The notes under the pieces were generated by a model, which was not told where the DNA came from, made no database searches, and was given only the letters and a program-made list of their open reading frames with translations. A DNA stretch of 64,000 nucleotides, from IMG/VR virus record IMGVR_UViG_3300009093_000034, positions 62,001-126,000 of that record. One strand, 5' to 3'. This document shows, in pieces, positions 27,383-53,352 of this stretch (within the stretch, counting starts at the first letter, position 1; each line of letters starts with the position of its first letter). The position numbers were made by a program, and so were the translations under genes.

Positions 27383-27456
27383 AGCAAAGTAGTGTAACGG
27401 TTTCGCACGACCAGTGTCTACTGGTTAGTTCTAGGATCATCCCCTAGACTTTGCTA
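27383..27456 (+). tRNA. degenerate tRNA-like element (Asp-like GTC in a 6-nt loop, non-canonical T loop)
   Basis: Acceptor AGCAAAG/CTTTGCT, D arm TAGTGTAACGG..GCAC, stem ACCAG/CTGGT, T stem CTAGG/CCTAG. Confidence 0.5.
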
Positions 27457-30603: not shown

Positions 30604-30841
30604 TATTTTCCTTCTTTATCAAAAGTAATATATAGACTAATGTGCAAATTTACTCACCAATGCAAATAAGAAAAAGTTAATATGGATTCCTAGATTGTTC
30701 ATTTTGAACAGTGTGTAAAATGAGCAGCATATATAAGAATCTAACATAATAAGAATCTTAGTACTTAGGGTCAAACCCGGATCAACAAGAGGTTGATTGG
30801 AGTTCATGAAGTTTTTACTGGACCATGTTATACTTGTTTGT

Positions 30842-32485
30842 ATGGCAAAAGAACTCCGATACTCAAACGATTCCAGACAACGCATGTTCAAGGGAGTTGA
30901 CAAGCTTGCAAAAGCTGTCATGACGACTCTTGGCCCAAGAGGACGAACAGTCATCATTCAAAAGACCTTCGGGTCTCCTTTGATCACAAAGGACGGTGTG
31001 ACCGTCGCTAGAGAAATAGAACTTCCAGATCCTTATGAGAACCTAGGTGCTCAGTTGATCAAGGAAGCTGCGATCAGAACTAATGATCTCGCAGGAGACG
31101 GTACCACAACGGCAACAACGTTGGCCTACTCCTTGATCAATCAAGGTCTTAAGAAGATCTCCGAGGGTTTTGACCCGATTGAGATCAAGAAAGGAATGGA
31201 AGAAGCTACTCTTAGAGCTCAGAAACACCTTCAGTCTTTTAAGATGGATGTTCAGGATACCAAAGACATCAGGCATGTTGCAACCATCTCAGCCAACAAC
31301 GATGCAGAACTTGGTGGCCTTCTGGCTGAAGCCTTTGATCACATTGGAAATGACGGAATTGTGACAGTAGAGGATTCTCCAAATCGACAGACCTTTGTCT
31401 CATATTCCGAAGGACTCGAGTATGATGAAGGATACGCAACTCCGTTCATTATCAACGACCCTAGAGGAATTGTTACTTATCAGAACCCAAGGTTCTTGCT
31501 CATTGATAGTGAGCTGAACAGCTTTCACATCATAGTCAAGATACTCGAGAAGTGGACGAGAGACGGTTGTAAGTATCCTTTCGTCATTGTTGCTACTGGG
31601 TTTTCTAACGAAGTTCTGACGACTATCGGTCAGAATGTTCAAGGTGGAAAAAGACCTATAGCTTGTTTCAAAGCTCCAGGTTTTGGAGAGAAGAAACAGG
31701 TTTACTTGAAGGACTTGGCTGCTGCTTTGGGAGCATCCATCTTTACACAACAAGAGGTTGGTCTTCAACTAGCTCAGTTCCAAGAAGAACACCTTGGAAA
31801 AGCTGGTTCCTTGAAGCTTACCTCAAACAGAACAACCATCGTTGATCCTAAGGGAGACGGAGAGGCATTTGAAAAACATGTTCAAGAACTTAGAGAGATG
31901 GAAGCAGAGTCTACTTCAGGCTTTGAAAAAGAACTTCTCCAAGAGCGACTCGCTAAACTCGCTGGTGGAGTTGCTGTGGTTCACGTTGGTGCTTCAACCG
32001 AAGTTGAACTCAAGGAAAAGAAACACAGGGTTGAAGACGCTCTGAATGCAACTAGAGCTGCTCTAGAAGAAGGTATTGTCATCGGTGGAGGAAACACACT
32101 CCTTAGAGTGGCAAAGCTTCTTTCTCAAAACATCAAGAACCTTGGATCACCAGGTTTTATGGCTGGTTACAACGCAGTGGTAAGAGGTCTTAGAGAACCA
32201 TTCTATCAGATCGCTTATAACGCTGGAAAGTCTCTAGAAGATATCGTCGAAGCCGTTCCAATCATTACCAAGACTGGAAGCACCAACATGGGTTGGAACG
32301 CTTTGACTGATACCTTTGGAGACCTATATGAAGAGGGAGTTATCGACCCCATCAAGGTCACTCGATATGCCTTAGAACACGCAGCTTCTGTTGCTGCTAT
32401 CTTCATGGTGGTTGAGTGTGCTATCATCGATCAAGGAAACATCCGTGTCGTACCTAATGGCTCGGAGTTAATGGGAGAATTCTAA
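30842..32485 (+). CDS. groEL: chaperonin GroEL (phage-encoded)
   Basis: MAKELRY...TLGPRGR...TKDGVTVAREI...AGDGTTTAT...ERLAKLAGGVAV...GGG; start set at MAKE. Confidence 0.97.
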   Translation: MAKELRYSNDSRQRMFKGVDKLAKAVMTTLGPRGRTVIIQKTFGSPLITKDGVTVAREIELPDPYENLGAQLIKEAAIRTNDLAGDGTTTATTLAYSLINQGLKKISEGFDPIEIKKGMEEATLRAQKHLQSFKMDVQDTKDIRHVATISANNDAELGGLLAEAFDHIGNDGIVTVEDSPNRQTFVSYSEGLEYDEGYATPFIINDPRGIVTYQNPRFLLIDSELNSFHIIVKILEKWTRDGCKYPFVIVATGFSNEVLTTIGQNVQGGKRPIACFKAPGFGEKKQVYLKDLAAALGASIFTQQEVGLQLAQFQEEHLGKAGSLKLTSNRTTIVDPKGDGEAFEKHVQELREMEAESTSGFEKELLQERLAKLAGGVAVVHVGASTEVELKEKKHRVEDALNATRAALEEGIVIGGGNTLLRVAKLLSQNIKNLGSPGFMAGYNAVVRGLREPFYQIAYNAGKSLEDIVEAVPIITKTGSTNMGWNALTDTFGDLYEEGVIDPIKVTRYALEHAASVAAIFMVVECAIIDQGNIRVVPNGSELMGEF

Positions 32486-33463: not shown

Positions 33464-33937
33464 ATGAAGAAGAGTAAAGAGAACTACCTAATCGTTGGTG
33501 GTAAAGAACTTAGTGCAGGTGTCGTTCTAACAGATGGCTCCTACATTTTAGGTTGTCTTCCCTTTGGTAGATCCTCTGGACCTAGACAATATGATCTTCC
33601 AAAAGGTCACGTTGAGGTTGGAGAGAAACCTAAAGAAGCTGCCATTCGAGAGATGGCAGAAGAAACTGGAATTCATCAACAAGAAGATTGGTTGATCGAT
33701 GTAGGTCAAATGGCTTACACTCCAAAGAAGAACCTTCATCTCTTCTTAAGTCTTCCAGATGCTCTTCCAGCCACAAAAGATCTTCGATGTAGTACCTACT
33801 TTGAGATTGGAGAAAAGGGAAAACAAGTACCTGAGATCATCGGATACAAGTGGATTCCGACTAATGAGCTTCATTGGTTCTTCCCAAGACTCGAACCTCT
33901 AGTTGCAACTGCTCTTAGAAAACTAGAGAATTTGTAA
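33464..33937 (+). CDS. NUDIX hydrolase
   Basis: Nudix box PKGHVEVGEKPKEAAIREMAEETG. Confidence 0.92.
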   Translation: MKKSKENYLIVGGKELSAGVVLTDGSYILGCLPFGRSSGPRQYDLPKGHVEVGEKPKEAAIREMAEETGIHQQEDWLIDVGQMAYTPKKNLHLFLSLPDALPATKDLRCSTYFEIGEKGKQVPEIIGYKWIPTNELHWFFPRLEPLVATALRKLENL

Positions 33938-33959: not shown

Positions 33960-34637
33960 ATGTCCCAAGATAACATTCTCTCTCAAGATGAGATTGATGA
34001 ACTTCTAACAGCCATATCTGTTGGAGGTTATGAAGATCAGGATTCTACAGAGCCTCCTTTTAGAGACATGTATGGTGATAAACATAAGAGGATCAAGATC
34101 TATGACTTCAAGAGACCTGACGTTCTAACTAAGGAACAAATCAGGATCCTAAGTAAGATCCATGAGCAAGCTTCAAGAGAGCTTCAGAAAACTCTTGCCC
34201 AGAGTTTTGATACTGAGGTCTTTAGGATCGCAGTAGCATCAGTAGACCAACTTCAGTACGAAGAATACACTAGAAGTATTAACAACCCGTCCCTAAACTA
34301 TTTCTTTGACGTCAATGATCTTGTTACCAATGTATCGTTGGAACTAGATCTCAAGTTCATCACAAAGTTCATAGTTAGAAGTATGGATGGCATAGCCAAA
34401 GATAAGTTCATTGACTACAATGAACATCACATCATTCGTGATGATGAATACGCTGAGTTTATTAAAGACAGAGACGTTGTATTAAAAGTTGTGAACCAAA
34501 TTTGGGAAACTCTTGATGTCCATTGGAACACATCTCTAGGAAGATCTAGAGATGATCAAGATCCTTCTTCTAACAAAGTCCAAATCGATGCAAACCCTCA
34601 GTTTCTTACTAACCTCTCTCTCCTGAAGAGATGTTAG
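33960..34637 (+). CDS. fliM: FliM-like protein, N-terminal and middle domains (frameshifted at a CT tract)
   Basis: ILSQDEIDELLTAIS (CheY-P binding), IKIYDFKRPD..TKEQIR, VASVDQLQYEEYTRSI, IDANPQF. Confidence 0.88.
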   Translation: MSQDNILSQDEIDELLTAISVGGYEDQDSTEPPFRDMYGDKHKRIKIYDFKRPDVLTKEQIRILSKIHEQASRELQKTLAQSFDTEVFRIAVASVDQLQYEEYTRSINNPSLNYFFDVNDLVTNVSLELDLKFITKFIVRSMDGIAKDKFIDYNEHHIIRDDEYAEFIKDRDVVLKVVNQIWETLDVHWNTSLGRSRDDQDPSSNKVQIDANPQFLTNLSLLKRC

Positions 34638-35098
34638 TTCTAATTACCTATGAGATCTCTATCAAAGATAGACAAGATCTTGATCAGGAACCAGACGAGT
34701 TCATGATGTGCATAGCTTATCCAAGAACCATGTTTACCAAAGAGGTACTGGAGTTACTCCAACCTGATTGGATGAATCAACGATTAGGATTAAATAACAA
34801 AAAACCTAAGAAGGTACAAAAAATGTCACTTAGCGAAGACGCTACAAAGAACTTCAAGCTTATTCAAGGAACAGAGCTTCCTATTGAGGTCCGTCTGGGA
34901 AAGACCAGTAAACCTCTTCAAGATGTCCTGAAGATTGGTGAAGGAACTATTCTGTCACTTGACAAGCTTGCGGGAGAAGCTGTTGATGTTTTTGTCAACG
35001 GAGTTCTCTTTGCAAAAGGCGAAGTGGTTGTTATCGACGAGAACTTTGGTGTTCGAGTAACCGAGGTTCTTGGAGACCAAGATGGAACGTCTGAATAA
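34631..35098 (+). CDS. fliN: end of the FliM middle domain plus FliN/FliY-type SpoA domain
   Basis: EEMLVLITYE...MMCIAYP then IEVRLGKT...GEGTILSLDKLAGEAVDVFVNGVLFAKGEVVVIDENFGVRVTE. Confidence 0.9.
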   Translation: MLVLITYEISIKDRQDLDQEPDEFMMCIAYPRTMFTKEVLELLQPDWMNQRLGLNNKKPKKVQKMSLSEDATKNFKLIQGTELPIEVRLGKTSKPLQDVLKIGEGTILSLDKLAGEAVDVFVNGVLFAKGEVVVIDENFGVRVTEVLGDQDGTSE

Positions 35099-53276: not shown

Positions 53277-53352
53277 GGAAAATTCGCCTAGCTGGTCAAG
53301 GCAAAATCATTTGAGATTTCTATCGCTGGTTCAACTCCAGCATTTTTCACCA
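53277..53352 (+). tRNA. degenerate tRNA-Gln-like (TTG in a 6-nt loop), encoded CCA
   Basis: GGAAAAT/ATTTTTC-A-CCA; AAATC-ATTTGA-GATTT. Confidence 0.55.

What the first reader, a model, noticed from the sequence alone, without database searches (positions are those of the whole stretch)
34605..34640. The fliM-fliN gene is broken by one extra CT unit in a (CT)n tract: possible phase-variable switch
Seen: AAC-CTCTCTCTC-CTGAAGAGATG, tract at 34614-34622. Removing one CT joins the two ORFs as NPQFLTNLSPEEMLVLIT, which matches the length of the FliM consensus as I recall it (NPQFAQIVPPSEMVVLVT). The coding signal is intact on both sides. Inference: slipped-strand ON/OFF variation (full chimera versus FliM-only plus a separately started FliN), a recent inactivation, or a sequencing/assembly error. 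The tract is short, so slippage rates may be low.
Basis: partly seen in the sequence, partly recalled or inferred. Interest (0 to 1): 0.62.

Follow-up and report, generated by a model that had tools for sequence, protein, structure and literature searches.

The report
Frameshifted phage FliM-FliN switch gene
A 306-kb jumbo phage carries a hybrid copy of two bacterial flagellar switch genes (FliM front, FliN back) that is split in this assembly by one extra CT in a short CT repeat, while another soil sample holds the same phage with the gene intact, so the break is a real, recent natural variant and not a proven on/off switch.

Summary
ORF1 (33960-34637, FliM N-half) and ORF2 (34631-35098, rest of the FliM middle domain plus a FliN domain) are one 378-aa gene. 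It is split by a frameshift inside (CT)4C at 34614-34622. Removing one CT gives a protein that aligns without a gap through the junction to an intact 371-aa syntenic relative (E 2e-88).

The split is not an assembly slip. The likely source run carries (CT)4 at depth about 12. A second rhizosphere run holds the same phage, 100% identical over 1.5 kb, with exactly two letters missing at 34614. That is the in-frame (CT)3 allele, but it rests on one 151-nt contig at depth 2.1.

So slipped-strand length polymorphism exists in nature. An evolved phase-variation switch is not shown. The tract is only 3-4 units, 20 equal tracts occur in the genome, the relative has no tract there, and no frameshift signal is present.

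The context is the bigger surprise. The gene sits in a complete 306-kb jumbo myophage with 50 tRNAs and no other flagellar gene. It keeps the CheY-binding motif, lacks FliM's GGXG motif, and ends in a FliN-type rather than FliM-type domain. A few other phage-like contigs carry similar genes.

The parts
33960..34637 (+). ORF1, 225 aa: FliM N-terminal peptide plus the first ~4/5 of the FliM middle domain, ending at a premature TAG caused by the frameshift
   Evidence: Pfam FliM E 8.5e-15; matches the H. pylori FliM middle domain 4fq0, query 39-212 = chain 4-167 of 210.
33975..34007 (+). Codons for ILSQDEIDELL, the conserved FliM N-terminal motif (CheY-P binding peptide in characterised FliM)
   Evidence: these columns are nearly invariant across 41 aligned FliM-type proteins. 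The CheY-binding role is established knowledge for FliM and was not tested here.
34614..34622 (+). (CT)4C tract. One CT unit is extra relative to the in-frame allele and is the site of the frameshift.
   Evidence: sequence; run X2 contig spanning 34564-34716 has 2 letters left out at 34614 and no other difference. (tract statistics).
34613..35098 (+). ORF2 frame (-1 relative to ORF1), first ATG at 34631: last two strands of the FliM middle domain, a linker, and a FliN-type SpoA domain
   Evidence: FliN 1o6a E 1.4e-19; alignment.
34859..35071 (+). FliN-type SpoA domain (GEGTILSLDKLAGEAVDVFVNGVLFAKGEVVVIDENFGVRVTE)
   Evidence: FliMN_C, residues 77-147 of ORF2; it groups with FliN-type, not FliM-type, C-terminal domains; it is the only such domain in the genome.
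34808..34825 (+). AAGAAGG followed 8 nt later by an in-frame ATG (34823): candidate internal start for a 91-aa FliN-only product (inferred only)
   Evidence: the phage's usual ribosome-binding motif is AAGGA 6-9 nt upstream of starts. L005 has AAGAGG before an equivalent internal ATG. L016 has none, so this is weak.
33464..33937 (+). Upstream NUDIX hydrolase gene, syntenic with the relative L005

Best explanation
The locus is one accessory gene of a complete 306-kb jumbo myophage from a rhizosphere metagenome. The gene is a natural hybrid of bacterial flagellar switch proteins, with nearest named relatives in spirochaetes. It has the FliM N-terminal CheY-binding peptide, a divergent FliM middle domain without the GGXG motif, a disordered linker, and a FliN-type SpoA domain. 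It is 378 aa when in frame. In the population that dominates the source sample, replication slippage duplicated one CT in a (CT)3C run. This truncates the protein inside the middle domain and strands the FliN part in the -1 frame. The in-frame ancestral allele still circulates in the same phage elsewhere. This is therefore a very recent, in principle reversible, frameshift variant of a dispensable host-manipulation gene. It is most likely an ordinary loss-of-function allele and not an evolved switch. Shown: the gene's identity, the phage context, the break, both alleles, and the intact syntenic relative. Inferred: that the intact protein enters or titrates parts of the host's flagellar switch (CheY-P through its N-terminus; FliN, FliM-C or FliH through its SpoA domain) to alter host motility during infection. 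Also inferred: that the broken allele loses this activity, apart from a possible FliN-only product from an internal start.
For: Break and repair; the CT-deleted protein against intact P0002 gives E 2e-88, 42% identity, and no gap at the junction.
Alleles. X1 (22-kb contig, depth 11.9) equals the window. X2 has six contigs totalling 1521 nt with no other difference, and the one spanning the tract lacks 2 letters at 34614.
Ancestral state. The syntenic NUDIX-FliM/FliN-small-ORF locus L005 has one intact 371-aa ORF and reads GTTCCTCCT at the site.
Slippage site.
No recoding signal: (downstream RNA fold z 0.16). No X_XXY_YYZ heptamer lies in the 25-nt overlap (read).
Phage identity: terminal repeats, CheckV 100%; rIIA, RNR, DNA polymerase, helicase, phage GroEL, baseplate wedge, tail proteins, major head; 50 tRNAs.
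Lone flagellar gene.
Fold. A model of the relative matches Salmonella C-ring FliM, H. pylori FliM middle domain (TM 0.85), and T. maritima FliN (57% identity).
Hybrid nature and lost GGXG.
Separate lineage from canonical spirochaete FliM: (quick tree only).
Against: The in-frame allele rests on one 151-nt Logan contig at depth 2.1. The tool warns that a difference in a contig under depth 5 may be an error, though a chance error that exactly restores the conserved frame is improbable. X1 and X2 are both 2017 rhizosphere metagenomes and may come from related field samples, so they may not be independent populations. No reads were available to see whether both alleles coexist within one sample. 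Coexistence would favour rapid switching. A recent preprint reports that repeats of only 6 or more bases in T-even phages frameshift at about 3e-4 and act as contingency loci (10.1101/2025.10.21.683753), so a short tract does not exclude a switch. No expression or functional data exist for either allele.
Confidence: 0.68

Rival explanations
1. Evolved contingency locus. The CT tract is kept because reversible (CT)3/(CT)4 slippage lets the phage population hedge between making the full FliM-FliN hybrid (ON) and making no full-length product or only a FliN fragment (OFF).
For: Both alleles occur in nature on otherwise identical sequence. The break lies exactly in a repeat. The same gene holds a second (TC)4 tract at 33977-33984. 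Short repeats have been proposed as phage contingency loci (10.1101/2025.10.21.683753). A possible internal start could keep a FliN-only product in the OFF state.
Against: The tract has only 3-4 units. The genome has 626 tracts of 3 or more units and 20 others of 4 units, and such tracts are depleted, not enriched (21 observed against 92 +/- 8 simulated). The only close relative has no repeat at the site. Only one allele was seen per sample. No benefit of the OFF state is known.
Confidence: 0.17
2. Sequencing or assembly artefact. The phage in the source sample really has (CT)3 and an intact gene.
For: Metagenome assemblies can carry indel errors. All contigs that hold (CT)4 or the split protein probably derive from the same reads.
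Against: The JGI contig and the Logan contig (depth 11.9) both read (CT)4, and the ENA contig encodes the same split 225-aa protein. Short-read platforms rarely make 2-nt indels in a 4-unit dinucleotide repeat, and a consensus over about 12 reads would correct them (general knowledge).
Confidence: 0.07
3. Programmed recoding. The (CT)4 form is the working gene, and full-length protein is made by ribosomal -1/+2 frameshifting or transcriptional slippage on the CT run.
For: The two frames overlap by 25 nt that contain a repeat on which a CUC-decoding tRNA could re-pair 2 nt downstream (read).
Against: No X_XXY_YYZ heptamer lies in the overlap. The downstream RNA folds no better than shuffles (z 0.16). 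An in-frame allele exists. The syntenic relative is a plain single ORF without the tract. A -1 slip would also add a residue relative to the conserved 13-residue spacing.
Confidence: 0.03
4. The record is a bacterial fragment misfiled as a virus, and the gene is an ordinary decaying host fliM.
For: This has been argued for another 'jumbo phage' record with flagellar genes, MW495066 (PMC13623518).
Against: The contig closes on itself (123-bp exact terminal repeat; CheckV 100%). It has phage structural and replication genes, mostly ORFans, and 50 tRNAs. It has no FliG or other SpoA gene. The gene's neighbours are NUDIX and small ORFans, conserved in synteny in L005.
Confidence: 0.03

Closest known systems
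FliM, flagellar C-ring switch protein (Pfam PF02154 + PF01052; e.g. Salmonella FliM in 8umd/8wiw, H. pylori FliM middle domain 4gc8)
   Same: It has the N-terminal LSQxEIDxLL peptide, the KIYDFxRPD start of the middle domain, the middle-domain fold, and overall length and domain order.
   Different: The GGXG motif is absent (MDGIAK in the window). The C-terminal domain is of the FliN type, not the FliM type. The gene is phage-borne, outside any flagellar operon, with no FliG in the genome. It lies on a long branch away from canonical spirochaete FliM.
FliN (PF01052; T. maritima 1o6a/1yab) and the engineered FliM(SpoA)::FliN fusion 4yxb
   Same: The C-terminal 75 residues are a FliN-type SpoA domain (E 1.4e-19 to 1o6a; 50% identical to a FliN in L004). 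They include the EVVVIDENFGVR block.
   Different: Here the domain is fused behind a FliM N-terminus and middle domain in a natural gene, with no separate fliN.
FliY of Bacillus/Thermotoga (CheY-binding peptide + CheC-like domain + FliN domain; 4hyn)
   Same: The three-part architecture and size are the same. The model of the relative also matches T. maritima FliY (rank 16).
   Different: The middle domain scores as FliM, not CheC, by sequence. CheC/FliY phosphatase motifs were not examined.
SctQ (YscQ/SpaO/HrcQ) of injectisomes, with an internal translation start giving SctQ-C (e.g. PMC8553256, PMC4295842)
   Same: It is a single gene combining a FliM-like and a FliN-like part. A Shine-Dalgarno-like motif plus an in-frame ATG lies just before the SpoA domain in the window and in L005.
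   Different: The internal start is only a sequence hint and is not conserved in L016. There is one SpoA domain, not two. There is no secretion-system context.
Simple-sequence-repeat contingency loci, including those recently proposed in T-even phages (bioRxiv 10.1101/2025.10.21.683753)
   Same: A frameshift at a short repeat inside a phage ORF, with both alleles present in nature.
   Different: It is a dinucleotide, not a homopolymer, repeat. No rate was measured and no selective context is known. The repeat is not conserved in the relative.

Membership tests
FliM (PF02154 family) | Significant match to the FliM profile above Pfam's gathering score | tested here: met
   55.6 bits against a cut-off of 27, though only profile positions 1-99 of 192 in ORF1. 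The remainder lies in the other frame and aligns.
FliM (PF02154 family) | N-terminal CheY-P binding motif LSQxEIDxLL | tested here: met
   ILSQDEIDELL at residues 6-16. Binding itself was not tested.
FliM (PF02154 family) | CheC-like middle-domain fold | tested here: met
   Sequence match to 4fq0/4gc8. The model of the intact relative P0002 matches 4gc8_B with TM 0.85. The window's own joined protein was not folded.
FliM (PF02154 family) | GGXG motif of the middle domain (FliG contact in characterised FliM; established knowledge) | tested here: not met
   canonical spirochaete FliM read FGGxGE. The window reads MDGIAK and P0002 reads YGDGPEG.
FliM (PF02154 family) | FliM-type C-terminal SpoA domain, and a place in a flagellar gene cluster with FliG and FliN | tested here: not met
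   The C-terminal domain is FliN-type. The phage genome has no FliG and no second SpoA gene.
FliN (PF01052 SpoA domain) | SpoA domain above the gathering score with FliN-type sequence | tested here: met
   (80 bits against 23.8). (1o6a E 1.4e-19). (57% identity of the relative to 1o6a).
Phase-variable contingency locus | Repeat-length variants that switch the reading frame are found among members of one population or lineage | tested here: inconclusive
   Two alleles were seen in two samples. One rests on a single contig of depth 2.1. Within-sample mixtures could not be seen in contigs.
Phase-variable contingency locus | Tract longer or more frequent than the genomic background, or conserved among relatives | tested here: not met
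   21 tracts of 4 units, none longer, and depleted against simulation; no tract in L005.
Phase-variable contingency locus | Raised, reversible mutation rate with a phenotypic consequence | not testable with these tools
   Needs cultured phage or deep read data.
Programmed ribosomal frameshift site | Slippery heptamer plus downstream stimulatory structure, conserved in relatives | tested here: not met
   No heptamer in 34613-34637. Fold z 0.16. The relative is a single ORF.

The most novel reading that the evidence does not exclude
A lineage of jumbo phages, probably infecting spirochaete-like flagellated bacteria, carries its own flagellar switch protein. It is a FliM-FliN hybrid that keeps the CheY-binding peptide and the FliN assembly domain but has lost the FliG-contact motif. 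The phage would use it to take over or jam the host's motor switch. In this phage, expression would be toggled by reversible slippage at short CT repeats, making it a phage contingency locus controlling host motility.
Probability: 0.12. Interest if true: 0.8.

Novelty: new variant of a known kind. Interest (0 to 1): 0.5.

Why it matters
Viruses are not known to build flagella, so a conserved switch-complex gene in jumbo phages points to direct viral manipulation of host motility or chemotaxis signalling. The library held little on this: no PHROG family matched, and five searches aimed at phage-borne flagellar genes found no description of it. The hybrid is a compact natural probe of C-ring assembly, since it keeps the CheY-binding and FliN parts and lacks the FliG-contact motif. 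The frameshift gives a natural knock-out/wild-type pair of the same phage, which is the contrast needed to test the gene's role. It also adds a field example to the recent claim that short repeats diversify phage populations. As a phase-variation claim on its own, the finding is modest.

Tried and rejected
- **Near-identical DNA:** none in GenBank phages.
- **MaAM05 hits:** tblastn hits to 'Microcystis phage MaAM05' were set aside, because that record carries a bacterial motor cluster and its viral nature is disputed.
- **Exact-pattern scans:** scans with a variable-length tract over JGI metagenome contigs and IMG/VR found only the source contig.
- **Word-based protein searches:** ORF1 found no near-identical 378-aa intact protein. 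A 70-aa piece of the ORF2 frame, meant to catch junction-spanning fragments from short contigs, found nothing.
- **IMG/VR scans:** single proteins gave two loci. The alignment gave four, which include those two contigs.
- **Recoding:** considered and rejected.
- **TAG read-through:** an amber-suppressor-type tRNA exists elsewhere in the genome, but frame 0 meets TAA two codons after the TAG, and TAG still ends 20 of 183 long ORFs. No other code was applied.
- **Motility module:** a search for GGDEF, FliG, a second SpoA domain and CheY found nothing above threshold.
- **Internal start before the FliN domain:** suggestive in two loci and absent in a third.
- **Tree:** the careful tree did not finish. 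Only the quick tree (SH-aLRT, midpoint root, long branches) is reported.
- **Joined protein:** it was used only in local scripts. It was not sent to the fold or database tools, which accept unaltered sequences only. The intact relative P0002 was folded instead.
- **Not used:** the large protein-representative search and complex prediction, since no binding claim rests on them.

Full report
**1. The observation**

The sequence at 34593-34633 reads AAC CTCTCTCTC CTGAAGAGATG, with (CT)4C at 34614-34622.
- ORF1 (33960-34637, 225 aa) ends at TAG 34635-37.
- The next ORF lies in the -1 frame. That frame is open from 34613, has its first ATG at 34631, and ends at 35098.
- Pfam assigns ORF1 to FliM (E 8.5e-15, only profile positions 1-99 of 192) and ORF2 to the FliM/FliN C-terminal SpoA domain (E 1.2e-22).
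- In a local script, deleting one CT joins the two frames into a 378-aa protein. It aligns through the junction, without a gap, to FliM proteins from related loci: window NPQFLTNLSPEEMLVLITYEI, relatives NPQFxxIVPPxEMxVLxT.
- The frame change must fall within the 25-nt overlap 34613-34637. Only 0.22% of 25-nt windows in this genome touch a dinucleotide tract of 4 or more units, so the coincidence of break and repeat is not chance.

**2. Where the gene sits**

The window is positions 62001-126000 of a 305,833-bp IMG/VR virus record with terminal repeats, rated 100% complete by CheckV. The two ends share an exact 123-bp repeat.

The genome encodes:
- rIIA, ribonucleotide reductase, a DNA polymerase, a helicase and a phage-type GroEL;
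- a baseplate wedge subunit, tail proteins and a distant major head protein match;
- 50 tRNA genes, 30 of them in the window.

Most other large ORFs match no phage family. This is a jumbo myophage, not a bacterial flagellar operon. It has no FliG and no second SpoA domain. The neighbours of the gene are a NUDIX hydrolase and small ORFans.

**3. Is the break real, and is it variable?**

The tract was examined in three public runs.
- **X1** is a 2017 rhizosphere metagenome and probably the source. It holds the whole 5-kb stretch in a 22-kb Logan contig at depth 11.9, identical to the window, with (CT)4. The JGI contig shows the same tract, and the ENA 305,853-bp contig encodes the same split 225-aa protein.
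- **X2** is another 2017 rhizosphere sample from a different study code. It has six short contigs, 1521 nt in all, with no substitution relative to the window. The one that spans the tract (34564-34716, 151 nt, depth 2.1) has exactly two letters left out at 34614. That is the (CT)3, in-frame allele.
- **X3** (soil, 2018) does not cover the tract.

Two caveats apply. The in-frame allele rests on one low-depth contig. X1 and X2 may come from related field samples. Even so, an error that precisely restores a conserved reading frame is improbable, and a 2-nt consensus error at depth 12 is equally unlikely. I take the polymorphism as real, with roughly 0.9 confidence.

Since X1 and X2 show no other difference in 1.5 kb, the frameshift is very young. 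This fits the undecayed coding signal on both sides of the break.

**4. Ancestral state**

The nearest protein in the 5.8-billion-sequence collection is P0002 (371 aa, FliM + FliMN_C). Its 13.9-kb contig, L005, is syntenic with the window: NUDIX, then the FliM/FliN gene, then small ORFs including an 87-aa one.
- The CT-deleted window protein matches P0002 end to end (E 2e-88, 42% identity, no gap at the junction).
- At the homologous site L005 reads GTTCCTCCT, with no CT repeat.

The single ORF is therefore ancestral, the split is derived, and the repeat is not a conserved feature.

**5. Switch, mutation or recoding?**

Points against an evolved switch:
- The genome has 626 dinucleotide tracts of 3 or more units, 21 of 4 units and none longer.
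- Four-unit tracts are depleted fourfold relative to a first-order Markov model (21 against 92 +/- 8).
- The ON allele's (CT)3C is therefore commonplace, and the OFF allele's (CT)4C only ties with 20 others.

Points against programmed frameshifting:
- The overlap contains no X_XXY_YYZ heptamer.
- The downstream 100 nt fold no better than shuffles (z 0.16).
- An in-frame allele and an in-frame relative both exist.

One point keeps a switch open. A 2025 preprint reports that homopolymer repeats of only 6 or more bases in T2/T4 frameshift at about 3e-4 and revert about 1000-fold faster than point mutations. Its authors propose them as phage contingency loci (10.1101/2025.10.21.683753). Appreciable reversibility at a 7-9-nt CT run cannot be excluded, and the same gene has a second (TC)4 run at 33977-33984.

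My reading is that slipped-strand mispairing certainly made the allele. Whether selection uses it as a switch is untested, and I rate it less likely (about 0.17) than an ordinary segregating loss-of-function variant.

**6. What the gene is**

The evidence comes from a 41-sequence alignment and an AlphaFold2 model of the intact relative P0002 (mean pLDDT 76). The model shows four parts:
- an N-terminal helix carrying the nearly invariant LSQxEIDxLL motif (ILSQDEIDELL in the window);
- a confident FliM middle domain (residues ~50-250);
- a disordered linker (257-281);
- a SpoA domain (286-355).

Foldseek's best matches are FliM chains of the Salmonella C-ring (8wiw, 8umd, 9n49), the H. pylori FliM middle domain (4gc8_B, TM 0.85), and, for the C-terminus, T. 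maritima FliN (1o6a, 57% identity).

The C-terminal domain of the window protein and its kin is of the FliN type (GEGTIxxLDKLAGExVD...GEVVVIDENFGVRVTE). Canonical spirochaete FliM proteins in the same alignment have the distinct FliM-type C-terminus.

Two further differences from canonical FliM:
- The GGXG motif (FGGxGE in the canonical proteins), which contacts FliG in characterised FliM (established knowledge), is absent. The window reads MDGIAK.
- The branch is long and lies outside the strongly supported clade of 340-aa spirochaete FliM. This comes from a quick tree only, with midpoint root and long branches.

The junction maps just before the last two core strands of the middle domain, and ORF1 reaches only residue 167 of the 210-residue 4fq0 chain. 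The ORF1 product is therefore a truncated domain, not an intact 'FliM-only' protein.

**7. Relatives in other phage-like contigs**

- A 329-kb contig (L003/L014/L015) encodes FliG followed by a 465-aa FliM-FliN fusion, among ORFans, GIY-YIG and HNH endonucleases and a GGDEF protein.
- A 74-kb contig (L016) has a 331-aa version near a GGDEF gene.
- An 8-kb contig (L018) has a 322-aa version near a Phage_Gp15 gene.
- Many 420-490-aa FliM+FliN-type proteins carry Treponema names.
- In IMG/VR only four contigs besides the window's own hold such a gene.
- PHROGs has no family for it.
- Five searches of the paper library aimed at phage-borne flagellar genes found no description of phage-borne FliM-FliN genes. 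That library lacks most subscription journals.
- The GenBank 'phage' MaAM05, which has a motor gene cluster, is disputed as a bacterial fragment (PMC13623518) and is not a precedent.

**8. How it most likely works (inference)**

The intact protein keeps the two parts that let FliM and FliN plug into the switch: the CheY-P docking peptide and a FliN SpoA domain. In known systems that domain pairs with FliM-C or FliN and binds FliH. The protein lacks the FliG-contact motif.

The simplest model is a phage-made subunit that either enters the host C-ring base or titrates CheY-P, FliN or FliH, changing rotation, switching or flagellar export during infection. The host is unknown. The nearest named homologues are from Spirochaetota.

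In the (CT)4 allele this function is probably lost. A FliN-only product of 91 aa might still arise from ATG 34823, which is preceded by AAGAAGG at the spacing this phage uses. L005 has an equivalent AAGAGG-ATG. The feature is missing in L016, so I give it little weight.

**9. Verdict**

The slippage origin and natural length polymorphism are supported, an artefact is unlikely, and a switch is unproven.
- The frameshift itself is an ordinary kind of event.
- The gene it hits, a jumbo-phage FliM-FliN hybrid with a natural knock-out/wild-type allele pair, is the part worth following up.

Noticed in passing
window 27383-59076 and G000:C1:128028-159849: The phage carries 50 predicted tRNA genes, 30 of them in the window. 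Two are odd calls with two-base 'anticodons' (window 27383-27456 and 53277-53352). Outside the window there is a tRNA with anticodon CTA, the amber-suppressor type (G000:159775-159849). TAG still ends 20 of 183 long ORFs, so stop-codon recoding is not evident.
   Followed up: partly
window 33977-33984: A second four-unit dinucleotide tract, (TC)4, lies in the same gene inside the codons for the CheY-binding motif (ATT CTC TCT CAA = ILSQ). Two of the genome's 21 such tracts fall in this 1.1-kb gene.
   Followed up: partly
window 34808-34825; L005:3031-3053: A Shine-Dalgarno-like AAGAAGG lies 8 nt before an in-frame ATG just upstream of the FliN domain, and L005 has AAGAGG 6 nt before its own. 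This recalls the internal start that yields SctQ-C in injectisomes. It is not seen in L016.
   Followed up: partly
L014/L015 10001-11398 and 8797-10008; L016 1075-2070; L018 479-1447: Other phage-like contigs (329 kb, 74 kb, 8 kb) carry FliM-FliN hybrids. One also has a full FliG. Two have GGDEF genes nearby, and homing endonucleases and ORFans surround them. This hints at a wider, undescribed set of phage genes aimed at host motility.
   Followed up: partly
window 30797-32485: A phage-type GroEL chaperonin (phrog_5725, E 9e-141) lies 1.5 kb upstream of the FliM-FliN gene.
   Followed up: no
L019:1495-1860 (G000:C1:221559-221924): A 121-aa ORF gives a weak receiver-domain match (18.5 bits, below Pfam's cut-off of 30.2). 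It is the only hint of a CheY-like protein in the phage.
   Followed up: partly
L001 (MW495066.1 104597-113034): The GenBank record 'Microcystis phage MaAM05' has pomA, ompA-like, fliM, and a downstream 'hypothetical protein' with a FliN match, among fatty-acid genes. This agrees with the published doubt that the record is viral (PMC13623518).
   Followed up: partly
whole genome G000: Dinucleotide repeats of 4 or more units are about fourfold rarer than a first-order Markov model predicts (21 against 92 +/- 8), and none exceeds 4 units. There are 201 homopolymers of 6 or more bases, the longest being 9.
   Followed up: yes
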